In this document: piece after piece, positions 38,501 through 60,400 of the stretch
Layout of the letters: each line of letters starts with the position of its first letter
Position numbering within the stretch: the stretch's first letter is position 1
Assembly (NCBI GenBank): GCA_965644265.1
Contig: OZ286476.1
Span: 20,336,001-20,399,762, forward strand
DNA: 63,762 nt
Direction of reading: 5' to 3'
From: Glycera tridactyla
Taxonomy: Eukaryota
Made by a program: the position numbers and the translations under genes
The notes under the pieces: generated by a model
The model's database searches: none
The model's input: only the letters and a program-made list of their open reading frames with translations
Told to the model about the DNA's origin: nothing

Positions 38501-41500
38501 GAAGTTGACCCAGCCCTAACTGAAATAGAACCATCTGGTGGAGCCATCTAGTGGTGTGAAGATACACTAATCTCTAATTCAAGTCATGATGCGCTCACCC
38601 AGCTATTGGCGCCATCTATCTGCTGGAGTTCCTGCATAAAACTTCAAGGGCTGACTTCTTCAGAAACTCTAAATATAGTTGAACCTGCTATAATGGGCAC
38701 CTGTATTAAGCAACCACCTGCCTTAAGCAACCACTTTTGAAAATCCCTCCGAGTATTTCTCACTATAATTAACCTGTATTAGACTGTTTGACTGTACACA
38801 AATTGATTGGCCTTTGATGGCCGCTATTCATGAATCTCCTAATTTCATGGAAGGCATTTATTATGCATCTGTGTGTATCATTTATTTCCACTGAAGAGTA
38901 TTTGTAATGTGTTCATCTCCACGAAAAAATGCAGGCTTTTGTAAAATCCTGATCAAATTCAAGACCCTAAACACAAACAATGTGTGATAGGAATTTGACA
39001 AAGGTCAATTTATTGTGGGATGAATGCATTTCTTGTTTTGTTTTGTGTATTACCAATGGTGGAACATCTCTGTTTCCAGATGGCAGTCCACCCAAGGTCA
39101 CAGAGAACCTGCAGGATGTCCTGACGGTTGCCCCCGCCAACACGAAACTCGAATGTGAGATTGACGGTGGCAAGCCATTGGCCAGTTTGACATGGTACCG
39201 TGACGGACGTGAGGTCCATGCGGGCGATCGCTTTGAGATGTCCTACACGGAGGATTCAGCTGAACTCACCATCAAGGGCACCGTGCCAACGGATGCTGGT
39301 GTCTACAAGTGTGAGGCTGTCAACAAACTTGGACGTTGTGATACCACTTGTAATCTCACCGTGCACAGTNNNNNNNNNNNNNNNNNNNNNNNNNNNNNNN
39401 NNNNNNNNNNNNNNNNNNNNNNNNNNNNNNNNNNNNNNNNNNNNNNNNNNNNNNNNNNNNNNNNNNNNNNNNNNNNNNNNNNNNNNNNNNNNNNNNNNNN
39501 NNNNNNNNNNNNNNNNNNNNNNNNNNNNNNNNNNNNNNNNNNNNNNNNNNNNNNNNNNNNNNNNNNNNAAGGAACCCAAAAATTGGGCATAGGCATTTGA
39601 CACATTTTATGGACCTTTTGCTAATGATTCATGTCACTGACATGAAAGTAATCTTAATAGTGAGCATCATTATGTGTATTTGTGTTTGAGAGGTCTGCAC
39701 ATGGTTGAGATGATGAACATCATATTGGTATCACAATTACAATATAAGAACCGCCTATCCTCTGCAATGTATGAAAGTGTCTCCATCACACACCAGGGGA
39801 ATCACTGATTTAGGAAAGGGTTGGTTGAAATCATTCACATCTGGTAGATTATCTCAAGCCGACATTTAATGAGAGCCTATCATGTTTATATTGTGGATAT
39901 TTTGGAAATGGTCGTAGAGTCCTAGTTCCATGATGAAGTATGAGTAGACATTCACTTTTGATAGCTGAAATAAGTACACTTCAGGTGAAAATGATAGAGA
40001 TACTATAGTAAGACGACATTGGTGTGTGAGATCCGCTTGTTATTCCCAACTCGGTTGTGTCCGCGGCTGGAGGCACACTCGGCCAGCATGTGAGAATACT
40101 CAGTAAACCAGTATGTCCACTTCTCAAATCAGAATACACCAAATACAGTTGTCACATTGTGAATTTATTGGTGGACAGTTGTCTGGATAGCTTAGAGCAT
40201 GTGACTGTTCATTCCAACACAGACACATGAGTTTGGTGCAATACTGAAGATTGAAGATCCAGGTTGAAATCCACAAAAATGAATTGAATGATGATTCCTG
40301 ATGGTGTCATTTGGACATTACGAGTGTGTACAGTGAAACCTGTGACAAGAGACCCCCTAATGAGAGACCATTTTCTACAGGTTTTTTCAGGGCAGCTTTT
40401 CTATAAGACATAGTCAAATATACCTCCTACCTCTTTTGGGAGACCACTTTTTGCCCACATTTAGTGTGGTCTCTCGACACAGGTTTCAATGTATTGTGAA
40501 ATAGGGTTTCATTCAAGACCAATTGTCTTTTTTTTCAGGCAAACCAGTCATCACATACGATGATGCTCTGAAGGAAGGCATCTCCCTAAAGGCTGGCGCC
40601 TCCCTGCTCATCATGGTGAATGTCACCGGCGAGCCAACACCCCGCATCACCTGGTACCATGGTGAGGAACAGATCTATGATGGAGCTGAGGGCACAACCA
40701 TTGAAACTGGTGCTGACTTCTCACGATTGACCATCAAACCCGCCCGTGGTCAACACACTGGTGTTTACAAGGTCGTGGCTGAGAACAAACACGGCAGCGA
40801 TGAGGCAATCTTCAATGCTACAGTCATTGGTAAGTATTATATTTATGTCATTCATAAACCAAAGGCAGCAATGGCTGCTGAAACAGTAAGAGATTCATGC
40901 TCTACCTACTTTTCAGCTTCATTTAGAATATTTTACCTGAGGCTGCAAATGGGACCTCATGATCCATGGTATACTCTTGGGCCTGGATTCAGAATTCTCC
41001 CTGCCTGAGGTTTGATGATATGTAAAAATGCCTCCCACATCATGAAACTCCCTTATTTTGCCATCTTTCATATGTTAACAATAGTACATGTCTACTTTTT
41101 TTATCAAAAAGTGATGACTTTGGGGTGGAAAGATTCGGACATTTTTTTATGAATACATAATTGGCTGATGCTTTCACAATGCATTGCAGGATCAACAGAT
41201 AGTTGACAATTTTGAGGCAGCTGAATTTAGCACAGATGCGCCCTATATGTGCTTAGTGATGTAGTGGGGTAGGTTACAAACCAACCAAAAACAGATTGAT
41301 TCTGAGCATGTAGTGTGATACTTAAGTGGGCGATCATTGAGAATAGTTTAGATATATAATCGTATTCAATCAATTTGTTTCCAGACCGCCCGTCCCCGCC
41401 TCTGAATCCACACCATACCGAGGTCTACAAGGATTACATCACCATTGCCTGGGAGACGCCCAAGTCTGATGGTGGCTCACCAATCACCGGATACATCGTG

Positions 41501-44500
41501 GAACGACGTGACGTCAAGAAATCATCCTGGGTCAACGCAGGAACCACTGATGCTTCAACGCTGACCCTGAAATGTACTCGCCTTGTTGAGGGCAATGAGT
41601 ATCTATTCCGAGTTTACGCTGAGAATGCTATCGGACAGAGTGATCCTGCCGAGACTACAGAACCAGTCAAAGCACGTCTCCCATTCGGTGAGTATCTTAT
41701 GCATTCACCATACAACTGGAAAGTATGATTTTGAAGTATTGTATGGAATGAGTGCATCAATTTGAAGGACAGCTTCGATGTATGTTTACTGCTTCACCTC
41801 AGTTGGTTGAAAATATAGTGAGGCTACTTGAAATTACTCATTTCTCTGAAACCACGGTCTTTAAGCTGATTGCCTCCCACAGAAATTCATGCATTTTGCT
41901 TCTGAGTTTGGTTCAGTGCTTCCTAAAACAAATAAATTCCTGATGTGAATGATGTTATCCTCGAAATACTTCAACCAAAGTAAAGGTAGTTGTGCCGATG
42001 CCCTTTTTAGAATTGACCAGTATGCATGTGGAATTGGTTCACTCTATGGTTCGATGTGGTATAATATGTCTCATTGTATGGCATTCAGATTTATATCAGT
42101 GAATTGGTACTAATTGTCCAACATTATAGTGATTGACCATGCTATTGAACTTTTGAATTGTGGTTATGATGTGATTAATATTATTATTGTGATTATCTAT
42201 TCCCTTGTCATTTGAGATCCAAATCTCAATATTGCTGAATAGTTCTCTGTTGCCATGTCTATATGAGATTGTTTCTGTATGTTTTAGATCCACCAAATCC
42301 ACCTAGGAATGTCCAGGTGAAAGACATCACAAAGACGTCTTGCAAGCTGACTTGGGAAGTTCCTGACTTTGATGGTGGCTCTCCAATCACTGGCTACTAT
42401 GTGGAGAAGTTCTCTGGAACCCGCTGGTCAAAGGTCAACAAGAAGTCTATCAAGAACCTTTACATGGAATTCGATGACCTCATTGAGTTGTCTGAATATG
42501 AGTTCCGTGTAATTGCTGAGAATGATGCTGGTCAGAGCAAGCCATCAGACACCTGCGGCCAGTTCAAGGCTAAAGATCCATTTGATCCACCAGGTCGCCC
42601 AGATGCCCCAGAACCCGAGATGGCCAAGGACAGTGCTAAGGTGACATGGAAGCCACCAGAGAGCGATGGTGGGGCACCCATCACAAACTACATCCTAGAA
42701 ATGCGCCGTGTTGGTGATGTCAAGTGGGTTGTATGCAATAAGAAGGAGACAGTGACCGACTTGGAATTCACAGTCACTGGAATCACAGAAGAGACTGATT
42801 ATGAGTTCAGAGTCACAGCTGAGAACAAGGCTGGACCAGGTCAACCATCACCTCCATCCAAACCAGCCAGATACAGTAAGTCAATACCCATACAGATGTC
42901 CTTTTGGAAAAACTATCAGACTTCACCGTTTGAGAATACTGAGAAGCAAGACATTCAGTTCTTTGAATAAAATCTCAATCTCAATCAACCAACCAGCCAT
43001 ATGAAGGTCCATTTGCAGGGCATTTTGCGGTCATTAGCTTTCTTCAAGATAAGATCAATCGACTGATCTGAGGTCAATTCAGAAAAGGATGACCTAATTT
43101 GATATTCAAACTCATGATCCATTTTTTAACAAAATTTATGTTCTATTTCTTAACCAATATAGCTATATTGAGGAGATTCTCAAAATCTTCTGAATAAAAT
43201 GCAGCAAAAATGGTCTCCTAGATAGCAGGACTGATTTATAGCCAGTACCAAAAGTATCTGTTGATTTCCCAAATTCCTTGAAGAAATATTGCTGTATATC
43301 CTTCTAAGAATGATATTTATCTCCTCTAATAGGTGAGAAGATCACATTCATCCGTGAACTTGAGGACACTATCATAAAGGAAGCCAATAAGACAGTCACA
43401 CTGGAATGTGAGATTTCTAAGGAGAATCTCACTGTTGACTGGTATAAGGGCGACCGCAAAATCCGCCGTGATGAGAAGTTCGACATCAAGATGGAGGGCA
43501 AGGTTCACAAGCTCATCATTGAGAAATGTGACGTGGATGACATTGCCTCCTATAGTGCAACTTACAAGAATCTGAAGACTTCATGCAAGTTGGATCTTGC
43601 TATTGCACCCAAGTTTGAGGCAACTGAGGAGACACGCTACATGAAGGTGAGTCTGAATATACCCCATTATCCTGTTTAGCTACCAGGGTGTCTCAATATT
43701 GTCATCAATCTGCTGATTCTATACATACGTTATGGAGCTACCTGGCAAAAGTTGTTGATAAGTAATCAATTGAAATTGCTATTGGAATGATATCCTGAGG
43801 TGAACACAAGCTCTGATGGTTGGCCACAGATTATGACATCCTCTCTACAAGTTATTGAGCTGAACATCTCTTACCATAAGAGATAATTTGTTAGGGATAT
43901 GACAAACATTCTCTCTGTTTGCCAAATTAACCTACCTGCAGATGGTTGCCAGATCCCAGTCAGATGAAGGTACAGTGAAACCTGTCTTGGGAGACCCCTC
44001 TTTTGGGAGACCACCCTCTAATGGGAGACCGCTCTTTATCGGCTCCTCTCTATTTGACATCGCAAAATATACCTCCAATGAGAGACCACCTGCCTTGAGA
44101 GACCACTTTTTGTTGACGTTTGGGGCGGTCTCCCAAGACAGGTTTTACTGTACTAAATAGAAATGATATGTCATCTAGAAACTTTGAATGTTAGTGAACA
44201 TCAACTATTGCACATCACAGGTACATAAGTTTATATGATTGCTTTGTGCAGAGAAAATGGGCCATGAGTAGGTCCTCAGTTGTCATTGATTTCTCATCAG
44301 TGTTGATGTTGTTTTGCTTTATGTTATTCTCACCTGATTCCAGTTTCGAATGTGGACAATTAGACCTCCTCCTGCAAGCTTATCTGTTTGGCTAACTGAG
44401 AAAACTTTAGCGGAATCCCCTGCCGATGATCTTTATCTTAAGTGTGACACAACAGAATGGGGACCTGTTTCCCTGTACAAGATGTTGCAACTGAACAGCC

Positions 44501-47500
44501 TGATGTATATGCACCATTTTTATCATTCCAGGTTGGCTCTCATGACAAGATTGAGCTGATATTTGCTGCAAACCCAATGCCTGAGGTGGAGTGGAAGTTC
44601 AACAATGGCAAGCTGCCTGATGCTCGCCGCTTCAAGACTGACATCATCCGTGGCATGACCTCCATGACTATGACCAAGCTCCAGCGTCCTGACAAGGGCA
44701 ACTATGTTGTTACCCTGAAGAACGAGCATGGACAGTCATCACTCACTGTCAAACTCATTGTGCAAGGTGAGTAGAATCTCTCCTAATGCTGAACATCTTA
44801 CCATACTATAAATGCACTTATGAATGTGATTATGGCTTTTGTTCAGAGGTAGTGGGTGACTAATTGAGACAAAATCATGAAGGTCGTTTGTATATCATCT
44901 TCTCGTGATAAAGTGATATGAAATGCCTTAAGAGAGCTAATCTAATGATGTACTGCAAAGGTGAGAAGCTTTCAGATTTCCCATGAGGAATCTTCATCAG
45001 CTCATGGCTACTGTGTCACTGCAGTATGAAAAACATATTCATGATGTTTCTAAAGAAATCTCCTTCTTTGAGCATTCAAAGTAACCATTATTCCAAGGAT
45101 GTTCTGAGTGAATCACTAGCATGTTCAATCTTCCTTTGGATAAAGGTTTATGTAAGATTAACTTTTAAAAATGAAATTCGTTCCCTTTTCACAGATGTTC
45201 CAAGTGCACCAGATCGCTTCCGTCCTACAAAGGTTACAGAGAACACAGTGTCCTTGGTATGGGAGGAGCCAGTTGATGATGGTGGCAGCGCGATCACTGG
45301 ATACAAACTGGAGAGACGTGAGGCCAGCAAGCGTAACTGGATTTCCGTTGGTAACTTCACTGAGATGGAGACCACAGTCACTGGATTAACGGAGAAAGTC
45401 CCATACCTCTTCCGTGTTGCCGCTGAGAATGAGATCGGCATGGGACCATTTGTAGAGCTCTCAGAACCCGTCACACCGAAGAGCCAGCATAGTAAGTGGA
45501 CCTGAATCATTTACCAGCAATTCAACAGTCGTTGCATCCGGAACATGAACTGTATACCCTTAGAGATACTATGAGAATGTTGCCAGCAGTATGCTTCTTT
45601 CAGCATAGAAAACATTCATTAAATTTCTACTAGTACTCCTGTTATGTAAGTCAAAAATGTTTCCAGGAATTACATCTATGTCACGAAATATTTGCAATCA
45701 TCAAGAGATCTAGCTACATGTAGTATCTTTGCTCTTGAACAAAAACTGGTAGATTTTTACAGTGATTCAGCTTAGCTCACAAAAGCTAATGTTGTTTGCC
45801 AATTTTGTAACTTAGGTGAAGCTTCTTCAACAAAACATCAACCACAACCATAATGGCAAACCATTACTTCTATTAGCAGCATATATCTTGTAAAGGTAAC
45901 CACTGCCATCTGGTGGTACATTAATCCACTGACAATGTAAATTGGTGTTGATTGATATGGAGCAATTGAATATAGATAATACCATCAGCGAGTACTCTGC
46001 TAACATTGAAATCATTTGAGGAATGGTTTCGAGATATTGTGAATTGAGTGCAAAAATCTGCTCAAAGTCAAAAGGCAATCATCAGTGGTACTTTTATTTG
46101 GATTAATTTTTTTGGCAATTTTGAAGGAGCCATTGGAGAATTGCTATGTGAAGCACCTTCGATACTACATCATGGCATGTATGGAGTGTTGAAAGAATGC
46201 AACCATTGATCTGTGTACAACTGTTATTTGATTGACTGATTCTTTTCTGTAACAGACCCACCAGGTGCTCCCGAAGAACCAACTGTCTCTGATGGGATGA
46301 AATCAAGCTGCGTTCTGACATGGAAACCACCAACAGATGATGGTGGCACCCCAGTCACCGGCTATTTCATCGAGCGACGATTGACCTCATCCACTCGCTG
46401 GGTCAAGGTCAACAAGGATGCGGTCACAGAATTGACTCTGAAGGTCAAAGAACTGATTGAGGACAATGAATATGAGTTCCGTATCTATGCTGTTAACAAG
46501 ATTGGTGAAGGTCCACCTAGCTCACCAACAGCGCCATTCAAGGCTAGAGACCCATGGGGTAAGTTATCATGTGTTGAATGACCGTCATTGTTAGGTATTA
46601 ATTTTGGTGAAATCCTCAAGGGCTTTCGCTGTTGCATGATTGCTCAAATTTGAAGCAAATTTGAGCTCATTGCTGGACATTTACTTGGCAGTTATAGTCA
46701 TTATTGGTTGTCTACTTTTGTGAAGGGAAGAAGTAGCCCCTCCATCTCATCTGAAAATGTAGTGTAATGATTAAGAGCCATCTCCTGAAAAGAGAAGGAT
46801 GCGAATGAAAATTTGTCAACCCATATTTGTGTACATATTATGCCAGAAACCATTACCTAGGTGAAAGTAGTAATGCTGCCTAAGTAACATTGTTGCTAAA
46901 ATTCCGTGCCATAGTACATCAAACACTTCGAGAATATTGAAGCATTCTGATTCCAGCACTAGGTCCACCATCAGGCAAATTGGAATAAAGAGTTCAATCC
47001 TATATTTTTCCGGCCTGTCATGGTGGCTCAGTGGTAGCATGCTGGGCTGGCGTGCAACGGGTCTGGGTTCAATCCCCGGCCCTACCATGCAGGAATGTTT
47101 CACCCGTCATCTTTGCTCCTCCTTGGCAGGTGGTTTGATTTAGCCTACTCAAGTGCAGAAAGTGGACCTAAAACCTTAACATTTCATTTATTTTTCTATG
47201 TTTTTCCACAGATAAACCTGGTAAGCCTGATCCACCAGTGATTGCCAAGACAACCAATGGTACAATCACCCTCAAGTACAAGCCACCAGAGGATGATGGC
47301 GGTGCTGAGATCTTCAACTACGTCATCGAGTACCTTGCAGAAGGTGCATTCAAGTGGGTCCAAGCAAACCGGGAGAATGTTGCGGACCTGACCTATACCA
47401 TCCGTAATCTTGACCAAGACACAATGTATGAGTTCCGTATTGCTGCTGAGAACAAGGCTGGTGTTGGACCACCATCTGACAAATCCAAAGCAGTTCCTGC

Positions 47501-50500
47501 TCGGGAAATCATTGGTGAGCATAATGTGAATGAATGTTGTGAATATTGATACATTTGCATGATAGCATGATTTTTATTTCTGCATTATCCATGACATATC
47601 ACAACAGATTTGTCAAAGTCTGGGTCATTGCCAGAGTGTTTTTTCCAAACAAGCATAGAAAGAATTTAGAGTAAGATCAGCGAATCACTCTGACAATTAT
47701 CTAACATGATCATCATCGAGGAACTTTCAAAGATGTATCAATAGCTTGAGTAAGTTCTATTCCAGCATGGGAGGTTTGGCATAAAGTTTGTAGATAGACC
47801 GTGGGAATACAGTTTAACCTGTCCTAAGCAGCCTATATACCAATCAGTCATCTACCTTAAGAAGCCACTTTTGAATTTCCTGCTGGAGATTTTTTTTAGT
47901 ATAATTCATCTGTTCTAAGCAGCCACTTTTTACCCTTCAGAAGGGGGGCTGCTCAGGTCAAGGTAAACTTTAAATTTCATGATGTATAATACATTTTTCA
48001 TTCATTGTCCTAATGGGGTATCTGAGAAAATTCATAAATCTGACATCAAATTCTTACAGATTCTTGATGGAGATTTTATTTCTTTCTTTGTTCAGATGGA
48101 AGTCCACCAAAGGTGACAGAGGAACTGCAGGATGTCCTGACTATTGCCCCTGCCAACACCAAGCTTGAGTGTGAGATTGATGGTGGCAAGCCATTGGCCA
48201 GTGTGACATGGTACCGTGATGGACGTGAGGTCTATACTGGTGATCGCTACACCACATCTTACTCTGATGATTCTGCTGTCCTAACCATCAAGGAGACAGT
48301 ACTGACTGATGCTGGTGTCTACAAATGTGAGGCCGTCAACAAACTTGGACGTTGTGACACTACTTGCCACCTCACCGTACAAAGTGAGTGATAAGTCGAT
48401 TTGAATATTCTGTTATCAAAGAGATGTCACCATTGTTGATTATAAACAACTGTATTCCATGATGACTTAATGTGAGATCTCCAATAGTTCATCATCACAC
48501 TGTATAGTTGATCTCCGATTCTATAATCATCAGCCCCTTCTTTTTTCCTCTCTCCTTTCTCTCTTCTCTCTCTCCCTCTCTCTCTCTCTGTCCCAGTCTC
48601 TATTTATCCATCTCTGTCTGTGAATCAGTCTCTCTTAAATACACACACACAATCACACTCTTGTGCACACACACACTTACATGCAAACACATATCTAGAC
48701 ACCCCCAACACATGCATCTTAATGAAGACACACCACTATATGTGTCCTTTGACTTGTATTTTCCAGGCAAACCAGTCATCACCTATGATGCTGTCCTCAA
48801 GGAAGGCGTATCACTGAAGGCAGGTGCCTCTCTCATTCTGATGGTGAACATCAGTGGTGAGCCACAGCCTCGTGCCTCCTGGTTCCTTGGTGATGAACAG
48901 CTATATGATGGATCAGAGGGTGTCACCATCGAATCTGGTGCTGACTTCTCACGTCTGACCATCAAACCGGTACAAGGGCAACACAGCGGAGTGTTCAAGG
49001 TTGTTGCTGAGAACAAACATGGCAGTGATGAGGCCACATTCAATGCCACAATCATTGGTAAGTATCCATATCTCAGATCTGTCTCAGATCTACATTTATG
49101 TGATACCTATTTCAGTCATTTATGTCATTAGTATGCAAATTTTCTCACATGCAGAAGGTGGAGAGGTAATTTGCCTCTCTGTAGCTTTACAGTTAGTTGC
49201 ACTAAATAGAAGTATAGAGTTTTTCAATAAGTAGAATCACCAATGGGTCTGTACTAAGTCCATTGCCAACATACAAATGTAAAATGTATGACATTGGTCT
49301 CTCATTATCCTGTATATCACAGATCATGGAGGACCTAGTTACGGCATTTGCAACAACATTGTTATGTTTCAATGATCCATGAATTGTGAAACTCTTTATT
49401 CATGTTCTCATAAGATGCTTGAAAGGCAATTGTAATCCCTTTTATCAATTCCCTTTTTTGTGACTGCTGATTTTGATGAGTAATCGAGCCTAAGTGTCCA
49501 AAACGATGTCAAGATATTAGTCTATGTAATGCATCACAATTTTGAATGTGAATGTATGATTTATGCTATCATTGATATTTTCAGACCGTCCATCCGTGCC
49601 TCTGAATCCACACCATACCGAGGTCTACAAGGATTACATCACCATTGCTTGGGAGACACCCAAGTCTGATGGTGGCTCACCAATCACCGGATACATTGTA
49701 GAACGACGTGACATCAAGAAATCATCCTGGGTGAACGCAGGAACCACTGATGCTTCAACGCTGACCCTGAAATGTACTCGCCTTGTCGAGGGCAATGAGT
49801 ATCTATTCCGAGTTTACGCTGAGAATGCTATCGGACAGAGTGATCCCGCTGAGACTCCAGAACCAGTCAAAGCACGTCTACCATTCGGTGAGTTCCTCGT
49901 GCATTCATCATGAAATTGGGGAATATGAATGGATTATTTATGGAATTGGTGCACCAAAGTAAACTAGAGCCTTGATGTATATTTGAATCATCATTCTTGC
50001 TTCACCTCAGTCGGTTGCAAATATACTGAAGCTACTTGAAAATGCTCATTGCCCTCTATCCAGTGTCTTCAGGTTTCATATATGGTTCAATGTATTCTCT
50101 TTGGTATAATATGTCTCATTGTATGGCATTCAGATTTATTTAAGTGAATTGGTACCAATAACTGTTGAACATCGTAGTTATTGACCATGCTGTTTAGATA
50201 TTGAACTGTTGATTTGTTGTTATTATCATATATTTTTATTGTAATTATATCATTGTCTTGTCACTTGAGAGCCAAATCTCAGTATTGCTGAAAAGTTCTC
50301 TATTGCCATGTCTATATGAGATTGCTTCTCTGTGTTTTAGATCCACCAAATCCACCTAGGAATGTTCAGGTGAAAGACATCACAAAGACATCTTGCAAGC
50401 TGACTTGGGAAGTTCCTGACTTCGATGGTGGCTCTCCAATCACTGGCTACTATGTGGAGAAGTTTTCTGGAACCCGCTGGTCAAAGGTCAACAAGAAGTC

Positions 50501-53500
50501 TATCAAGAACCTTTACATGGAATTCGATGACCTCATTGAGTTGTCTGAATATGAGTTCCGTGTAATTGCTGAGAATGATGCTGGTCAGAGCAAGCCATCA
50601 GACACCTGCGGCCAGTTCAAGGCTAAAGATCCATTTGATCCACCAGGTCGCCCAGATGCTCCAGAACCCGAGATGGCCAAGGACAGTGCTAAGGTGACAT
50701 GGAAGCCACCAGAGAGCGATGGTGGAGCACCCATCACAAACTACATTGTCGAAATGCGCCGTGTTGGAGATGTCAAGTGGGTGGTATGCAATAAGAAGGA
50801 GACAGTGACCGACTTGGAATTCACAGTCACTGGAATCACAGAAGAGACTGATTATGAGTTCAGAGTCACAGCTGAGAACAAGGCTGGACCAGGTCAACCA
50901 TCACCTCCATCCAAACCAGCCAGATACAGTGAGTCAATGTCCATACTTCTGTGAAAAACTTTATCAGATATCCGCATTTGAGAACACTGAGAAACAAGAT
51001 ATTCAGTTCTGTGAATATAGAAAACATTCCTGGAATCCCTGCTGAATATCCTTCAAGTGTGTCAAAAATGAAGCAGAGCTTCTTTTCAGTTTGAATATAA
51101 GCAGACATAAGCAGTAGCATGCTGGGCAGGCGTGCAATGGGTCTGGGGTTCAATCCCCGGTCGTACCATGTAGGAATGTTTCACTCTTCATCTTTGCTCC
51201 TCCTTGACAGGTGATCTGATTTTTTTGTGATCTATTTTCAAATAAACTTTTGATCCATCTCTTGACTAATATAGCAGCAACGAGAAGTTGCTCACTCCTG
51301 TATTTTTGAAGGAAATGCAGCAGATATACATTTCTAGATCACAGGACTGAGATGTAGCCACTACCAAAAGAATCTGTCAATTTCCCATGTTCCTTGAAGA
51401 AATATTGCTGTATATTTTTCAAGAAAGCAATGTTTCTTTTCTAATAGGTGAGAAGATCACATTCATCCGTGAACTTGAGGACACTATCATCAAGGAAGCC
51501 AATAAGACAGTCACACTGGAATGTGAGATTTCTAAGGAGAATCTCACTGTTGACTGGTATAAGGGTGACCGCAAAATCCGCCGTGATGAGAAGTTCGACA
51601 TCAAGATGGAGGGCAAGGTTCACAAGCTCATTATTGAGAAATGTGACCTGGATGACATTGCCTCCTATAGTGCAACTTACAAGAATCTGAAGACTTCATG
51701 CAAGTTGGATCTCGCTATTGCACCCAAGTTTGAGGCAACTGAGGAGACACGCTACATGAAGGTGAGTCTGAATATAGACCATTATTCTGTTTAGCTACCA
51801 GGGTGATTTGGCCATGGCCATATTGTCATGAATCCATTGATTTTATGCATGCATTATGGAGCTGCCAGTCAAAATTTATTCAGGTAAACTTGTTGATAAC
51901 TTGTCAATTGAAATGGCTATTGGGATGATATCATCAGGTGAACACAAGCTCTGATTTTGGCCACAGATTATCTCTTACCATAAGAGATAATTTGTTTGGG
52001 ATTTGACAAACATTTTCTCTGTTTGTCAAACTAAACTGCCTGCAGATGGTCTCCATATCCCAATCAATTAAAGTTACTTTATACAAATGATATATCAATG
52101 AGAGATTTGTTGAATGTTAGTGAATGGCAGCTATTGCTTATGAGAATAAGCTCCTCAAAGGTACCTGATTATATTTTATCGATTTGGGCAGAAAAATCGA
52201 CCAGAAATAGGTACAAAAGGTTAGTGACCGTTAGCTGCAACTGAACAGCCTTATGTATGTGCACCATTTTCATCATTCTAGGTTGGCTCTCATGACAAGA
52301 TTGAGCTGATATTTGCTGCAAACCCAATGCCCGAGGTGGAGTGGAAGTTCAACAATGGCAAGCTGCCTGATACTCGCCGCTTCAAGACAGACATCATCCG
52401 TGGCATGACCTCCATGACCATGACCAAGCTCCAGCGTTCTGACAAGGGCAACTATGTTGTTACCCTGAAGAACGAGCATGGACAGTCATCACTCACTGTC
52501 AAACTCATTGTGCAAGGTGAGTAGAATCTCTCCTAATGTTGAACCTCTCACAAAAAACTCTCCATCTTTCCAGCTTGGTCCCTTTCTCATACTATGAATG
52601 CACTTATGAATGTGATTATGGCTTTTGTTCAGAGGTAGTGGGTGACTAATTCAGACAAAATCATGAACGCCATTGGTATATCATCTCTTTATGATAATAT
52701 CATAGTGGAAAAATAGGTGTTTTAGGATTATTGAAATATTTTGAATCCTCATTGTATTTCTATGTATGTGAATTGAATAGAACCACAGCAGTCAGCAAGT
52801 CTGTGATGACACACAAGCCAACGTCCGGCAAGTGGGTGAAGCCATGAGAGTCCTCTGGTACAAAGTCATTAGCCAACAGGACCATGCTGGGAAATACCGG
52901 CCTGACTAGCCATGACTGTGATTCAGTCATCCAAACCTATAAACGGAAAGTCACCAGCCTCCCTGCAGTCAGTCAGACACAGTCAGACAGCCAGAGTCAG
53001 TTAGTCTGATGATAGTGTTTGGATTTCGTCTCGGACACTATTTCTACATATGGGCCGCCTTTGAGTGGCTTCCTAATTGTACACTATCTGGACATCCCAT
53101 GCCCCGCACAAGTGCCCACTCTCCTCACTGACTTATTCTGCTTGGTTCCAACTCTCTACAAACTCTCTACTGTTGAATCAATGAATGCTACAACATTTCT
53201 ACAAGCTGCGTTGGATTATACCTAACCTGCGAGTGTTCTACGTAATGTGATTCCATGTGCTCATCCCATGGTGAACTGTAACATTTATCCCCCGCGTTAT
53301 ATCACATATGAGTTCTGCTGAACTGCGGCAAAACCCATATGGTAATGAAGTGAAATGAATTGCCTTAAGAGATCTAATCTCATGATGTACTGCATATTCA
53401 TGACGTTTCTGAAGAAATCTCCTTCTTTGAGCATTCAAAGTAACCATTATTTCAAGGATGTTCAGAGTGAATCACTAGCATGTTCGATTCTTTATTTGGA

Positions 53501-56500
53501 TAGAGGTTTATGGAAGATTAACTGTTAAAAATGAGATTTGTTCCCTTTTCACAGATGTTCCAAGTGCACCAGATCGTTTCCGTCCTACCAAGGTTACAGA
53601 GAACACAGTGTCTTTGGTATGGGAGGAGCCAGTTGATGATGGTGGCAGCGTGATCACTGGATACAAAATGGAGAGACGTGAGGCCAGCAAGCGTAACTGG
53701 ATTTCTGTTGGTAACTTCACCGAGATGGAGACCACAGTCACTGGATTAACGGAGAACCTTCCATACCTATTCCGTGTTGCTGCTGAGAATGAGATCGGCA
53801 TGGGACCATTTGTAGAGCTCTCAGAACCCGTCACACCAAAGAGCCAGCACAGTAAGTGAACCTGATTGAGTATTGTTTAATGTCCTATCATTTACCACCA
53901 GTCCAAAAGCAGATGCATGTGGACCATGAAGTGATTGGTAAAATTGTACAGTGAGTTCAGCTCAGCTCACAAAAGCTAATGTTCACCAAGTTGTCTGCCA
54001 GTTTTGTAACTTAGTTGAAGCAACCTCAACAAAACATCAACCACAAGCATCATGGCAAACCATAAATTCTGTTAGCAGCACATGTCTTGTGAAGGTAACC
54101 ACTGCCATCTGATGGCATATGAATTCATTGATGATGTAAATTGATATTGGTGAGACTGAGCAATTGAATATGAATAACGCATGCTTCAGCTTCCTATCCG
54201 CAAGGACTCTGCTAACATTGAAACCATTTGAGAAATGGTTTTGAGAGAGGGGCATTATGTTTTTGAATCGACCCTGGTGTGGGTGGGTGGGTGTGTGGGT
54301 GGCTGGGTGGGTGAATAATGGTTTCCGACCGATAACTCAAAAAGTTTCAGGGCTGATCTTTTCAAACTTGGGATACAGACTCCCTGGGGAATGGCAAGAC
54401 ACCTATTGATTTCGGGGCGGTCATCTTGAATTTCAAAGTCACTGAGTGCAAAAAGGTCAAAACCATTTCCGACCAATAACTTTAAAAGTTTCAGGGCTAG
54501 CTTTCTCAAACTTAGTGAACAGAATTCCCTGGGGTCTGGTAAGACACCTATCGATTTGGGGGTGGCCATCTTGAATTTCAAGGTCACTAAGTGCAAAAAG
54601 GTCAAAATGGTTTCTGACCAATGACTTGAAGAGTTTCAGGGTGAACCTTCTCAAATTTCATGAACAGACTCCCCTAGGGTCTATCAAAACAGCTATCGAT
54701 TTTTGAGTGGCCATCTTGAATTTCAAGGTCACTGAGTGCAAAAAGGTCAAAACCATTTCTGACCAATAACTTGAAAAGTTTCAGAGCTAGCTTTCCCAAA
54801 TTTGGTGTGCAGACTCCCCCAGGTTCTGGTAAGAATCCCATCGATTTTGAGGCGGCCATCTTTAATTTCAAGGTCACTAAGTGCAAAAAGGTCAAAATGG
54901 TTTCGAACCTATAAATCAAAAAGTTTCAGGGCTAATCTTTTCAAACTTGGTATACAGTCTCTCCTGGGGTATGGCAAGAAATCTATATATTTTGGGGCAG
55001 CCATCTTGAATTTCAAGGTCACTGAGTGTGGAAAAGGTATTAGTTTTGTTCTATTTCACTTCTTTCGTTCCACCTTCCTGAGACAAGCATGCACTCAGCG
55101 GGGCATTCACACTTACTGAGTGCATCTATTTTTTGGGGGAAATTTTGAATGAGCTATCAGAAAATTGCTATATGAAGCACCTTCGATACTATATCATGGC
55201 ATGTATGACTGTTGAAAGAATGTGACCATTGGTCTGTGTACAACTGTTATTTCAATGACCGATTGTTTTCTGTAACAGACCCACCAGGTGCTCCTGAAGA
55301 ACCAACTGTCTCTGATGGGATGAAATCAAGCTGCGTTCTAACATGGAAACCACCAACAGATGATGGTGGCACCCCAGTCACCGGCTACTTCATTGAGCGT
55401 CGGTTGACCTCATCTTCCCGCTGGGTCAAGGTGAACAAGGATGCGGTCACAGAATTGACTCTGAAGGTCAAAGACCTGATTGAGGACAATGAATACGAAT
55501 TCCGTATCTATGCTGTCAACAAGATTGGTGAAGGTCCACCTAGCTCACCAACAGCACCATTCAAGGCTAGAGACCCATGGGGTGAGTCATCATCTGTTGA
55601 ATGACTGTATAGCATTGTTTGGTATAAGTTTTGGTGAACTCCTCTAGGGTTTTTCATGTTGCCTAATTGTTCATTCTGAGATGAAGCAGACTTGAGCCTA
55701 TTGCTCAACATTCGCATGGCGGCTACGTTCATTATTGATTGACTACTTCAATGGTTTAGAGAAGTAGCCCTGCCATCTCATCTGAAAATGTAGTGTAATA
55801 ATTGCAGCCATTTCATGAAAAGAGAAGGATGCAAGTGAAAATTTGTCATCCCATATCTATGTACATATAATCACCAGAAACCATTACCTATTTGAAGGTA
55901 GTAATGCTAGTTGAGTCACATAGCTACATGTATTCTATCAAACCTTTAAAAGATATTAAAGCATTCTGAACAGTAAATTCTGAATTAAGAGAATTCAATC
56001 TTATGTTCTTTTACACAGACAAACCTGGTAAGCCAGATCCACCAGTGATTGCCAAGACAACCAATGGTACAATCACCCTCAAGTACAAGCCACCAGAGGA
56101 TGATGGCGGTGCTGAGATCTTCAACTACGTCATCGAGTACCTTGCAGAAGGTGCATTCAAGTGGATTCAAGCTAACAGGGAGAACGTCGCTGACTTGACC
56201 TATACCATCCGTAATCTTGATCAAGACACAATGTATGAGTTCCGTATTGCTGCTGAGAACAAGGCTGGTGTTGGACCACCATCCGACAAATCGAAAGCAG
56301 TTCCTGCTCGAGAAATAATTGGTGAGCATGTTGTAAACAAATGCTATGAATATTGCAACATTTGCGTCATAACATGATTTTTATTTCTGTATTATCCATG
56401 GCTTGCCACAACAAACTAGTCAAAGTCTGGCTCATTGCCAGATTGGTTATTTCAAAGAAACATATAAAGAATTCCGAGAAGATCAGTGAATCACTCGGAC

Positions 56501-57414
56501 AATTGACTAACATGATCATCATAGAGAAAGTTCCATTGATAGCTTGGGCATGTTTGGCTCAATTTCAGCATGGAATGTTTGGCATAAATTTTGATAATAG
56601 GGTTGGTTCAAATTGTGGGAATACTTTCAATCCCATGATGTATGACACATTTTTTATTCATTACCCAGAAGTAATATTTGAGAAAGTCCATGAAACTGAC
56701 ACGATATAATGACTTCAGGTCTATGATGGATATCTAATTTTGTTATTCAGATGGCAGTCCACCCAAGGTGATTGAAGACCTGCAGGATGTCCTGACACTT
56801 GCCCCTGCCAATACAAAGCTGGAGTGTGAGATCGATGGTGGCAAGCCATTGGCCAGTGTGAGTTGGTACCGTGATGGACGTGAGGTCTATGCTGGTGATC
56901 GCTACACCACATCTTACTCTGATGATTCTGCTGTCCTCACCATCAAGGAGACAGTACTGACTGATGCTGGTGTCTACAAGTGTGAGGCCGTCAACAAACT
57001 TGGACGTTGTGACACTACTTGCCACCTCACCGTACAAAGTGAGTAATGAATCAATTAGAATATTTTGTCAACAAAGAGATGTAAGCTGTGTTCATCATAC
57101 ACTATTATACTCCATGATAAGAAGTTTTGATAGTGCATAATCAGGGTGCAGAGATCATATGTATAAAATTGGCATCATTAACTTTGTCTATTTGTCTGCA
57201 CTGCTCTATATCTCCCCCTCTTTCCCTTTGTATATTAGTACAGTATTATCTTTCAGTCCAGAATGATCATTTGATGGCAAGAAAATGTTGAATTACACTC
57301 AATCGATCAATCTACCAATCAATCAATCAATCAATATCTTTATTTTTGTCCGGCTGTCAGTCTCTCTCTCTCACACTAACACACCCACACACAATGCATG
57401 CATGCGAGCACACA

Positions 57415-57476
<62 letters not shown>

Positions 57477-60400
57477 TCTCCATGAAGACAAATAACTATA
57501 TATGACTTTTGGCTTGAATTTTTCAGGTAAACCAGTCATCACATATGATGCTGCCCTCAAGGAAGGTGTCTCACTGAAGGCAGGTGCCTCTCTCATTCTG
57601 ATGGTGAACATCAGTGGCGAGCCACAGCCTCGTGCCTCCTGGTTCCTTGGTGATGAACAGCTATATGATGGATCAGAGGGAGTCACCATCGAATCTGGTG
57701 CTGACTTCTCACGTCTGACCATCAAACCGGTACGAGGGCAACACAGCGGAGTGTTCAAGGTTGTTGCTGAGAACAAACATGGCAGTGATGAGGCCACATT
57801 CAATGCCACAATCATTGGTGAGTCTTCCAATTAATCTCTGTCCCAGATCTACATTTTGTAACACCAATATGTATTTCAGTGATTTGTGTTATTAGGATGC
57901 AAATTTTTCCATGCGCAGAAGCTGAAGTAATTTGCCCTCACAGTCAGTTGCGATGAATAGAAGCTAGGTAACATTGCATGTGGGGTTGTGCTCAAACCAT
58001 TTCCAATGTGCTAATGTGAAACGTATGACATTGATTTCCCATTATCATGAATATATAGCAGGAAATGGAGGACCCAGTTACAGCATGATAGTAAAAAATA
58101 TGCACATTCACCCACATGGCCAATTGATCAAATGGTCCAAAATTTCTTTAACATACATTGGCAACAACATTCTGTTATGTTTCAATTGTCCATGAATTGT
58201 AAAAATGTTTATTCATTTTCCCATCAGATGCATCAGAGGAAATTGTGATTCCTCCTGTCGATTCCCTGGTTATAACTACTGAGCTTATTTGGTAATCAAG
58301 CCTAAGTGTCCGAATAGATGTCAATCTAAGATATGGATGTATGGTGTATAATGTATGCTATCATTGATTTTTTCAGACCGCCCATCCGTGCCTCTGAATC
58401 CACACCATACCGAGGTCTACAAGGATTACATCACCATCGCCTGGGAGACACCCAAGTCTGATGGTGGCTCACCAATTACCGGTTACATTGTTGAGAAGCG
58501 TGACATCAAGAAATCATCCTGGGTGAACGCAGGAAATGTTGATGCCTCAACGCTGACCCTGAAGTGTACTCGTCTTGTTGAAGGCAATGAGTATCTGTTC
58601 CGAGTTTATGCTGAAAATAAAATTGGACAGAGTGATCCTGCCGAGACTACAGAACCAGTCAAGGCACGCCTTCCATTTGGTAAGTGGAATTGCTTTTCTG
58701 ATGATTGGTAATTGAGTTGTTTCCTGAGTTACAGTTCACTACTTCAAGATTGGTGGCAATTTTTTTTATCTCACTCATGTGCCATGGAAACATTAGAGTA
58801 CTCTCCCCGGAGACAGTTTCATCCCTCATATACCACTCGTCAGCCAAATGTGTTGATTTAAGATTGTTGACAACTTGTCAGTCAAAATAGTGGACCCCTT
58901 GCCAACACAAGAATGTGAAAGTAAAACTCTGAGGCTCATTTGTGGATTATTGACAATTTGTATGGTCTCCATTGCTGAGTTGTGGACCTTCTATGATGAC
59001 TTTCATATCATTCAAGATAGTGGATTGACCATATTCATTTCAGTTGATTACAATCTCAAATGCAGTACATTCATATTATCCACCACATAAGGTCCTGAAA
59101 CCACTAAACTTGTAATGTATTGCCATCTTTGTGGAGCGATTACAAAGCACTTATTCCTAATCACCCCAGTTAAATACTTCTTTTATATTTGCAGACCCAC
59201 CAAATCCACCCAGGAATGTCCGTGTGAAGGATGTAACAAAGACATCATGCACTCTGACTTGGGAAGTTCCCGACTTTGATGGTGGCTCTCCAATCACTGG
59301 CTATTATGTGGAGAAGTTCTCTGGAACCCGCTGGATCAAGGTCAACAAGAAGCCAATGAAGAAACTCATCATGGAATTCGATGACCTCATTGAGTTGTCT
59401 GAATATGAGTTCCGTGTAATTGCTGAGAATGATGCTGGTCAGAGCAAGCCGTCAGATGGCTGCGGCCAGTTCAAGGCTAAAGATCCATTTGATCCACCAG
59501 GTCGCCCAGATGCCCCAGAACCCGAGATGGCCAAGGACAGTGCTAAGGTGACATGGAAGCCACCACAGAGCGATGGTGGAGCACCCATCACAAACTACAT
59601 TGTAGAGATGCGCCGCACCGGTGATGTGAAGTGGGTTGTATGTAACAAGAAGGAGAAGGTGACTGACTTGGAATTCACAGTAACTGGATTGGTTGAGGAG
59701 ACTGAATATGAGTTCAGGATCACAGCTGAGAACAAAGCTGGACCAGGTCAACCATCACCTCCATCCAAACCATCCAAATATGGTAAGCTCCAGGTTTCAA
59801 ATTTTAAGAAATATTAGCACAGAAGCAAGAAAGGATACAAAAACAAAATAGTCAGCATTCCTCACTCTGGTACATATGGAAAAATTGTTTCGGTTCTGTC
59901 TGCCCTACTTCTGTTTGGAATCAGGATTTTGTGTTTTGGTGATCTAAGATCATAGCATAGAATACATATTGACCACCCACATTTCAGGCCCCACCAGCAG
60001 GAAGTTCTTCCCAGCAAACACATAAGATGTGCCAAACTTACTATCAAGTATTCTCTATTTTGAAGCTGTCAAAATGGCTGTGAATCTCTTTCCATCACCG
60101 AAACTTACCCACGCATACACAAATAATTGCTGCAATTTGACACCCTGCAGTCATCAGTTCTCATGATATGCAGGAATTGTCAGATGATACTTGTTCAACT
60201 GTGACCAAAAGCTGCTTATCATCTTTATCTTTATCTGCCTCAATTTTTCAGTGGAGAAAATTACATTCATCCGTGAACTTGAGGAAATCACCATCAAGGA
60301 AGTCTGCAAGACAGTCACATTGGAATGTGAGATTTCCAAGGAAAATCTCACTGTTGACTGGTACAAGGGTGAACGTAAGCTGCGCCGTGACGAGAAGTTT

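What the first reader, a model, noticed from the sequence alone, without database searches (positions are those of the whole stretch)
41385..58679. Young 8.2-8.8 kb tandem duplication adding one whole super-repeat, with its breakpoint inside FN3 exon H
Seen: exons and introns from H1 to H2 (8,200 bp) align with H2 to H3 (8,792 bp). The intron upstream of H2 matches the one upstream of H3 but not H1; the intron downstream of H2 matches the one downstream of H1 but not H3. H2 starts like H3 (PSVP, DIKK, GTGAAC) and ends like H1 (GTTDAS, AENAIG), with a few discordant sites. Inference: unequal crossover between H1 and H3 inserted 974 codons in frame. Human NEB and TTN have analogous triplicated exon blocks (established), and the NEB one is copy-number variable. 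Caveat: two very divergent haplotypes joined by the assembler would look similar, although the intron divergence and multiple TE differences argue against this.
Basis: partly seen in the sequence, partly recalled or inferred. Interest (0 to 1): 0.75.

Follow-up and report, generated by a model that had tools for sequence, protein, structure and literature searches.

The report
Extra super-repeat in worm titin gene
A giant titin-like muscle gene of a worm holds two neighbouring copies of one complete 10-domain building block, most likely made by an ancient unequal crossover inside an exon; both copies are intact and at least parts of both are transcribed, but this kind of event is already well known from human titin and nebulin.

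Summary
Unit A (41385-49584) and unit B (49585-58376) align collinearly through nine exons and nine introns. Unit C and the upstream unit match them in exons only. Each unit is 2922 nt, or 974 codons, with no stop codon and intact AG/GT sites.

The junction lies inside FN3 exon H2. The 400 bp upstream match only H3's upstream intron (z=61). The 400 bp downstream match only H1's downstream intron (z=29).

H2 is not a clean two-part chimera. It runs H3-type, a short H1-type patch (49685-49706), H3-type, then H1-type from 49744. The last switch falls in 49734-49743.

Spliced RNA contigs from four runs in two studies carry GT..AG joints into and out of H2. Contigs listed for three of those runs begin with an H2-specific 31-mer. 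This rules out an assembler chimera.

"Young" holds only in a relative sense. Intron K2P is 0.19 and dS is 0.135. With dN/dS about 0.07, both copies are under purifying selection. Repeat insertions differ between the copies.

Exons IJ, K, L and Q are more alike than the introns, which points to later gene conversion.

A net gain of one unit, rather than overwriting of an older unit, is inferred and was not tested. This is a new example of a known kind of event.

The parts
41385..49584 (+). Unit A: a complete 10-domain super-repeat with its introns. Exons are H 41385-41687, IJ 42288-42875, K 43333-43646, L 44532-44766, M 45195-45491, N 46256-46558, O 47212-47514, P 48096-48383 and Q 48767-49057.
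   Evidence: Exon ends come from RNA joints and homology extrapolation with AG/GT sites. Pfam gives fn3 and I-set for each exon. The unit is 2922 nt with 0 stops.
49585..58376 (+). Unit B: the duplicate super-repeat. Exons are H2 49585-49887, IJ 50341-50928, K 51448-51761, L 52282-52516, M 53555-53851, N 55279-55581, O 56019-56321, P 56751-57038 and Q 57527-57817.
   Evidence: It is collinear with unit A, introns included. Exon identity to A is 94.1-98.4%, with dS 0.135 and dN 0.010.
41385..41687 (+). Exon H1 (FN3). It is the parent of the 3' part of H2.
   Evidence: From H2 position 49744 to the exon end, every one of about 18 informative sites groups H2 with H1 and none with H3. The downstream introns are homologous.
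49585..49887 (+). Exon H2, the chimeric junction exon (303 nt, in frame).
   Evidence: Site pattern. Max-chi-square permutation gives p=0.016-0.019 on exon sites alone. RNA joints 49056>49584 and 49886>50340 are GT..AG.
49585..49658 (+). H3-type 5' segment of H2.
   Evidence: Sites 49592, 49596-97 and 49658 agree with H3 and not H1. The GT at 49596-97 is a derived state shared by H2 and H3 relative to outgroup exon L001. 49646 is the only discordant site. There H3 alone differs from H1, H2 and L001, which fits a later change in H3. All 15 informative sites in the 20 bp of intron just upstream (49562-49581) are H3-type.
49685..49706 (+). Short H1-type patch inside the H3-type half of H2.
   Evidence: 49685, 49691 and the 4-nt cluster 49703-49706 agree with H1. 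H3 and outgroup L001 share the other state at 49685 and 49703-49706, so these are not later changes in H3.
49713..49733 (+). Second H3-type segment of H2.
   Evidence: Sites 49713 and 49733 agree with H3 and not H1.
49734..49743 (+). Ten-base interval holding the last H3-to-H1 switch (the crossover point).
   Evidence: It is bounded by the H3-type site 49733 and the H1-type cluster 49744-47. RNA contigs in X1, X2 and X4 start at 49714, so their first 31-mer spans both markers. An X4 contig laid up to 49743 continues as H3 sequence.
49744..49887 (+). H1-type 3' segment of H2.
   Evidence: About 18 informative sites group H2 with H1 and none with H3. H2-private letters at 49787, 49847 and 49850 are read in RNA of run X1.
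58377..58679 (+). Exon H3 (FN3), first exon of unit C. It is the parent of the 5' part of H2.
   Evidence: The upstream intron is homologous to that of H2. Identity to H2 is 89% over the whole exon.
47007..47200 (.). Short interspersed repeat present only in unit A, in the intron before exon O.
   Evidence: It is absent at the matching place in B, 56007. A copy of the same family lies at a non-matching place in B, 51114-51222, at 90% identity. The flanks look like a target-site duplication. RNA word depth is very high.
54322..55028 (.). 145-bp satellite, 4.9 copies, present only in unit B (intron M-N).
   Evidence: TRF. It is absent from A at 46034-46113.

Best explanation
A titin-like muscle gene is built from a 10-domain super-repeat: Fn3-Fn3-Fn3-Ig-Ig twice, in nine exons. 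It underwent one unequal homologous crossover between the first FN3 exon (H) of two neighbouring super-repeats. Only same-position exons of neighbouring units were alike, so pairing was in register one full unit out of step. The product carries one extra complete unit of 974 codons in frame.

The new middle exon H2 is a hybrid. Its 5' part and upstream intron come from the downstream parent (H3). Its 3' part and downstream intron come from the upstream parent (H1). The short H1-type patch inside the H3-type half is most simply a footprint of patchy heteroduplex repair at the crossover, or of one later short conversion.

The event is old, at about 0.19 substitutions per neutral site between the copies. 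Since then both copies have stayed under purifying selection. Each has gained its own repeats. Some exons (IJ, K, L, Q) have been partly re-homogenised by gene conversion.

Shown: the structure, the junction, the intact frame, transcription and splicing of exons H2 and IJ-L of unit B and O-Q of unit A, and selection on both copies. Inferred: the crossover mechanism, the net gain of one unit, and any effect on filament length.
For: The copies are collinear through exons and introns. Flank homology switches exactly at exon H2: upstream H2~H3 z=60.8, downstream H1~H2 z=29.4, and all other pairs z about 0. Informative sites in H2 switch from mixed or H3-type to purely H1-type at 49734-49743 (permutation p=0.016-0.019). 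H2 is exactly 303 nt. The unit is 2922 nt with no stops, and all splice sites are AG/GT. Four runs from two studies give spliced RNA contigs. The joint 49056>49584 is seen in all four, and 49886>50340 in three. Listed contigs of three runs begin with the 31-mer 49714-49744, which only H2 has. H2-private letters are read in X1. A versus B gives dS 0.135 and dN 0.010. The synonymous p-distance of exons M-P equals the intron p-distance (0.17 against 0.168, Fisher p=0.80). Copy-specific repeats are described. Domain identity comes from Pfam. The best solved relatives are titin C-zone chains 8q6t_I and 8g4l_bm.
Against: No outgroup with resolvable one-to-one orthology was available. The net gain of a unit is therefore not demonstrated. 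H2's 5' half is equally far from H1 and H3 (10 differences each), so its H3 ancestry rests on the intron and a few shared derived sites. Three H2-private letters (49589, 49649, 49857) equal the outgroup state while H1 and H3 share another. A simple model does not predict this. The RNA evidence comes from short de Bruijn contigs that mix paralogues wherever they share more than 31 identical bases. No single contig links unit A through H2 into unit B with copy-specific letters on both sides. No DNA reads were available.
Confidence: 0.8

Rival explanations
1. There was no net gain. The array already had a distinct unit between A and C. A long (about 8.5 kb) gap-repair or gene-conversion event, anchored in the H exons on both sides, overwrote it with a copy of its neighbour. 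The number of super-repeats did not change.
For: The end product would be the same pattern of flank homology and a hybrid H exon. Gene conversion is clearly active in this array. Exons IJ, K, L and Q have a synonymous p-distance of about 0.07 against 0.168 for introns (Fisher p=1.7e-6). IJ of unit C is also unusually close to A and B (dS 0.28-0.33 against 1.0-2.5 for K and N).
Against: The tract would have to cross about 5.5 kb of introns with no homology between donor and recipient. That is much longer than the exon-sized tracts seen here. Both tract ends would have to fall at nearly the same place in exon H. Unequal crossover needs one event only.
Confidence: 0.1
2. The duplication is real, but the original junction was not inside the exon, or lay at its edge. 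The present mosaic of H2 was produced afterwards by several short conversions among H1, H2, H3 and other H exons.
For: The mosaic has at least three switches. Three H2-private sites match the outgroup. Exon-limited conversion is active in the array.
Against: Intron homology runs right up to both exon edges with opposite parents. The exon has no indel. A non-homologous junction exactly at an exon edge is unlikely, and the only shared homology for a homologous junction is the exon itself. The 3' 144 nt are uniformly H1-type.
Confidence: 0.07
3. Assembly artefact: two divergent haplotypes of one unit were placed in tandem, and H2 is an assembler-made chimera.
For: The window has six N runs elsewhere, so the assembly is not gap-free.
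Against: There is no N run in 41385-58679. Intron divergence is 0.19, with many indels and different repeat insertions. The 31-mer 49714-49744 is specific to H2 and begins the RNA contigs listed for three runs across two studies. The H2-private letters are read in X1. RNA of study P1 differs from the assembly at 49781, so it is not the assembly's own data. A-type O and P exons and B-type L exons occur together in the same runs.
Confidence: 0.02

Closest known systems
Human NEB triplicate region (TRI: exons 82-89, 90-97, 98-105)
   Same: It is an in-frame tandem repeat of a whole block of exons, corresponding to super-repeat units, inside a giant sarcomeric filament-protein gene (PMC9109913, PMC6087456).
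   Different: The NEB blocks are described as highly identical and are recurrently copy-number variable in people. Here the copies differ by 2-6% in exons and about 17-19% in alignable introns. Copy-number variation was not tested. The domains are Ig and Fn3, not nebulin repeats.
Human TTN segmental duplication region (PEVK exons 172-180, 181-189, 190-198)
   Same: A nine-exon block is repeated in tandem within a titin gene, with recurrent copy-number variation reported (PMC9142044). Here too the block has nine exons.
   Different: The human block lies in the elastic PEVK/I-band part. This one lies in an Ig/Fn3 super-repeat array whose best solved relatives are thick-filament (C-zone) titin. 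It is also much more diverged.
Variation in nebulin super-repeat number among vertebrates
   Same: Gain and loss of whole super-repeats is a route by which a filament-associated giant protein changes length between species (PMC7754682).
   Different: That work links repeat number to thin-filament length and body size across 53 species. No such comparison exists here, and the ruler role of this protein is untested.
Vertebrate titin A-band super-repeats (7-domain and 11-domain)
   Same: The Fn3/Ig domains are closely related (E=3e-140 to chain 8q6t_I, summed over five matched stretches). Both show a strict periodic domain order that must have arisen by whole-unit duplication.
   Different: The unit here is 10 domains, 2 x (Fn3-Fn3-Fn3-Ig-Ig), with Ig pairs that the vertebrate A-band repeats lack. 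This duplication still has alignable introns, so its junction can be read.

Membership tests
Tandem segmental duplication by unequal homologous crossover (NAHR) | Two adjacent, same-strand, collinear copies that include non-coding sequence | tested here: met
   nine exons and nine introns align in order. 2749 intron bases align at p=0.168.
Tandem segmental duplication by unequal homologous crossover (NAHR) | The junction lies in sequence homologous between the two parents, in register and without an indel. The sequence upstream of the junction derives from the distal parent and the sequence downstream from the proximal parent. | tested here: met
   H2 is 303 nt like H1 and H3. Flank z-scores are 60.8 and 29.4 against about 0. 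The last switch is at 49734-49743.
Tandem segmental duplication by unequal homologous crossover (NAHR) | Net gain of one unit relative to the ancestral or outgroup locus | not testable with these tools
   The related loci found are too distant. L001 has dS>1 and is a 1.2-kb contig. L002 has 42-67% aa identity and matches units U, A, B and C about equally.
Copy-number-variable intragenic segmental duplication (NEB TRI / TTN SD type) | The copies are highly identical throughout, including introns | tested here: not met
   Intron K2P is 0.19 and exon identity is 94.1-98.4%. The longest perfect A/B tract is 194 bp, in exon IJ (sites listed).
Copy-number-variable intragenic segmental duplication (NEB TRI / TTN SD type) | Copy number differs between individuals | not testable with these tools
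   Only RNA contigs were available. All four runs examined contain H2. No DNA run held the stretch.
Titin-family giant sarcomeric protein with a periodic Ig/Fn3 super-repeat | Exons encode I-set Ig and Fn3 domains whose closest solved relatives are titin | tested here: met
   Pfam fn3 and I-set for every exon tested. PDB best hits are titin 8q6t_I, 8g4l_bm and 3b43_A.
Titin-family giant sarcomeric protein with a periodic Ig/Fn3 super-repeat | A fixed domain order is repeated along the gene | tested here: met
   The order H(Fn3) IJ(Fn3-Fn3) K,L(Ig-Ig) M,N,O(Fn3 x3) P,Q(Ig-Ig) holds in units A, B and C, and in part in U. The same order is found in another species' locus, L002.
Titin-family giant sarcomeric protein with a periodic Ig/Fn3 super-repeat | Binding along the thick filament, or a ruler function | not testable with these tools
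False duplication in the assembly (uncollapsed haplotypes) | The junction sequence is absent from real molecules, and the copies differ only at an allelic level | tested here: not met
   The H2-specific 31-mer and the H2-private letters are present in RNA contigs. Divergence is far above allelic levels and the repeats differ.

The most novel reading that the evidence does not exclude
The number of 10-domain super-repeats in this worm's titin-like protein may be evolutionarily adjustable and may set a filament dimension. On that reading, this retained, selected and transcribed extra unit lengthened a molecular ruler in this lineage. The extra length would be about 40 nm if each domain spans about 4 nm, as in vertebrate titin. 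The 194-bp perfect tract still shared by exons IJ of A and B would keep the locus prone to further gain or loss.
Probability: 0.12. Interest if true: 0.65.

Novelty: new member of a known kind. Interest (0 to 1): 0.35.

Why it matters
This is a readable record of how a periodic giant muscle protein grows by one whole period. The parents, the hybrid exon, the crossover interval (10 bp) and a repair or conversion patch can all still be seen. The extra 974 residues are kept under purifying selection, and exon H2 and the three exons after it in unit B are spliced into mRNA. The locus also gives an internal clock: synonymous sites of four exons match intron divergence. That clock exposes exon-sized gene conversion in the other exons. 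If the protein measures a filament, counting these units across related worms would be a direct test. In itself the mechanism is textbook and has well-known human parallels in NEB and TTN.

Tried and rejected
1. Global MAFFT with iterative refinement timed out. The fast mode was used instead.

2. Homologues of exon H2 were searched to look for the orthologous locus. The closest (P0001, locus L001, GCA_013332675.1) is a 1.2-kb contig with no intron homology and dS>1. It is usable only as an outgroup for exon sites.

3. A second species' 20.5-kb locus (L002) has the same module order. It is only 42-67% identical in protein and matches U, A, B and C about equally. One-to-one orthology and unit counting were not possible, and walking the contig was judged not worth the look-ups.

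4. The accession of L001's assembly was not found in the paper library, so no species name or date calibration was obtained.

5. tRNA ancestry of the short interspersed repeat at 47007-47200 was not supported. ARAGORN found nothing and Rfam gave no hit at E<=1.

6. A paper on titin evolution (PMC12198301) held nothing on this kind of repeat.

7. RNA contigs could not give copy-specific linkage across several exons. They mix paralogues wherever more than 31 bases are shared. Examples are K contigs with A-type letters at 2-4 of 5 sites and Q contigs with two B-type letters.

8. The haplotype-artefact reading was rejected (see the rival explanations).
Full report
**What the window is.** The + strand carries a long run of about 300-nt and 590-nt exons. 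Each encodes Fn3 or I-set Ig domains (Pfam). Their best solved relatives are titin, namely the C-zone chains 8q6t_I and 8g4l_bm and the I-band chain 3b43_A. Earlier notes of this scan call the gene a worm titin-like gene with a 10-domain super-repeat (s1-345380). I confirmed the domain order myself. It is H (Fn3), IJ (Fn3-Fn3), K and L (Ig-Ig), M, N and O (Fn3 x3), and P and Q (Ig-Ig). The N runs lie outside the finding and were not touched. Exons were sent to search tools one by one, by reference. Concatenation was used only inside local scripts, to count stops and to compute dN/dS.

Self-BLAST gives a collinear chain of HSPs between 41378-49893 and 49578-58685 at 81-94% identity. The chain includes introns. 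MAFFT shows exon windows at 94-99% and intron windows at about 58-90%, with many indels. H exons start at 41385, 49585 and 58377, giving periods of 8200 and 8792 bp. Unit C and the upstream unit U match A and B in exons only.

- All 18 exons of A and B keep AG/GT sites and equal lengths.
- Each unit is 2922 nt = 974 codons without a stop.

**The junction.** A local-alignment test against shuffles gave these results.

| 400-bp flank | Pair compared | z |
|---|---|---|
| Upstream | H2 vs H3 | 60.8 |
| Upstream | H1 vs H2 | -0.3 |
| Downstream | H1 vs H2 | 29.4 |
| Downstream | H2 vs H3 | -1.3 |
| Either side | H1 vs H3 | about 0 |

Homology with opposite parents therefore runs up to both edges of exon H2. 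The only sequence shared by the parents is the exon, so the recombination point must be inside it.

Within the exon the sites fall into four segments.

- **49585-49658:** H3-type, at 49592, 49596-97 and 49658.
- **49685-49706:** H1-type, at 49685, 49691 and 49703-06.
- **49713-49733:** H3-type.
- **49744-49887:** uniformly H1-type. About 18 informative sites group with H1 and none with H3.

A max-chi-square permutation on exon sites alone gives p=0.016-0.019.

An outgroup H exon from another species (L001) shares the H3 state at 49685 and at the 4-nt cluster 49703-06. The H1-type patch in H2 therefore cannot be a later change in H3. It must come from H1. H2 is thus a mosaic with at least three switches, and the last lies in the 10-bp interval 49734-49743. 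Patchy repair of heteroduplex at the crossover, or one later short conversion, explains them most simply.

**Is it real?** Only RNA-type runs hold the stretch. Contigs from four runs, in two studies with two organism labels, were laid at 97% or more.

- They give GT..AG joints at every intron from exon O of unit A to exon L of unit B.
- The joint 49056>49584 is seen in all four runs, and 49886>50340 in three.
- Contigs in X1, X2 and X4 begin exactly at 49714. The preceding 31-mer is shared by H2 and H3 and then branches.
- The first 31-mer of these contigs holds G at 49733 (not H1) and C at 49744 (not H3), a combination only H2 has.
- An X4 contig laid up to 49743 continues as H3.
- X1 reads the H2-private letters at 49787, 49847 and 49850.
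- Study P1 differs from the assembly at 49781, so it is independent data.
- A-type O and P exons and B-type L exons occur in the same runs.

An assembler-made chimera is therefore excluded. There is one limit to this evidence. The contigs switch between paralogues wherever more than 31 bases are identical (K, Q and IJ show mixed letters). No single contig proves the order A-H2-B.

**Age and selection.** A versus B gives dS 0.135 and dN 0.010, a ratio of about 0.07. Alignable intron sequence (2749 nt) gives p=0.168 and K2P 0.19. Exons M, N, O and P have a synonymous p-distance of 0.17, equal to that of the introns (Fisher p=0.80). Exons IJ, K, L and Q have 0.07, which is lower than the introns (p=1.7e-6) and lower than the other exons (p=2e-4). 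The duplication is therefore about 0.19 substitutions per neutral site old. Some exons were re-homogenised afterwards. This agrees with the scan's separate note on exon-restricted homogenisation (s1-349800).

Copy-specific repeats confirm long independent histories.

- A short interspersed repeat lies at 47007-47200 in A only, with duplication-like flanks.
- A fragment of the same family lies at 51114-51222 in B only.
- A 145-bp satellite lies at 54322-55028 in B only.

A/B versus C has dS of about 0.55, and the outgroup species has dS>1. 'Young' is therefore true only relative to the other units. By my own rough knowledge of invertebrate neutral rates, this means tens of millions of years.

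**Mechanism.** Same-position exons of neighbouring super-repeats are far more alike than different positions within a unit. For example, the H exon protein is about 48% identical to the M-type exon in tblastn. Homologous mispairing is therefore channelled to a full-unit offset, and an exon-internal crossover keeps both the frame and the domain intact. This is the classical unequal-crossover route. It is the one invoked for the human NEB triplicate region and for the TTN nine-exon block that is repeated three times (PMC9109913, PMC9142044). Gain and loss of nebulin super-repeats between vertebrates is also documented (PMC7754682).

**What is not shown.** A net gain of a unit was not demonstrated. 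A long conversion or gap repair that overwrote an older unit would leave the same picture. The related loci I could fetch are too distant to count units. Copy-number variation, filament binding and any ruler role are untested.

**Verdict.** This is a genuine and well-preserved but ancient intragenic tandem duplication of one super-repeat, with a mosaic junction exon. It is a new instance of a known kind, of moderate interest.

Noticed in passing
window 42288-42875 / 50341-50928, 43333-44766 / 51448-52516, 48767-49057 / 57527-57817: Exons IJ, K, L and Q of units A and B have dS 0.06-0.08. Neighbouring introns have K2P 0.09-0.29, and exons M-P have dS 0.16-0.22. This points to exon-sized gene conversion after the duplication. 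The intron after L (K2P 0.087) seems to be included in one tract.
   Followed up: partly
window 49589, 49649, 49857: Three letters private to H2 equal the state of the outgroup exon L001, while H1 and H3 share another letter. This is more than chance would suggest. It may mean conversion between H1 and H3, or input from another H exon outside the window.
   Followed up: no
window 47007-47200 and 51114-51222: A short interspersed repeat family has very high RNA word depth (about 1000-3000 in bin 47000-47196). By eye it has tRNA-like box motifs, but ARAGORN and Rfam do not recognise it. Insertions are independent in the two units.
   Followed up: partly
window 54322-55028: A 145-bp satellite of 4.9 copies, about 80% alike, is present only in the M-N intron of unit B.
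   Followed up: partly
window 6276-8543 (-) and 8547-9110 (-): An uninterrupted 756-aa ORF with a reverse-transcriptase domain (RVT_1, E=2.7e-40) follows a 188-aa ORF. Both lie inside a large intron of the titin-like gene. This is probably a fairly recent non-LTR retrotransposon.
   Followed up: partly
window 48921, 48974, 48142: All four RNA runs read letters that differ from the assembly at 48921 and 48974. Three of them (X1, X2 and X6; X4 has no depth there) also do so at 48142. The RNA letters equal the paralogous copy: Q of unit B for the first two and P of unit U for the third. Either conversion polymorphism or contig path switching could explain this.
   Followed up: partly
L002:3800-20528: A distant species' contig (ENA ctg10156) shows the same module order, M N O P Q H IJ K L M N O P. 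There P and Q appear to lie in one exon (6954-7526), so intron positions differ between species.
   Followed up: no
window 1-40838: The upstream unit U has far larger introns than units A-C. They span tens of kb and contain transposons and all six N runs. The younger units have introns of 0.4-1.4 kb.
   Followed up: no
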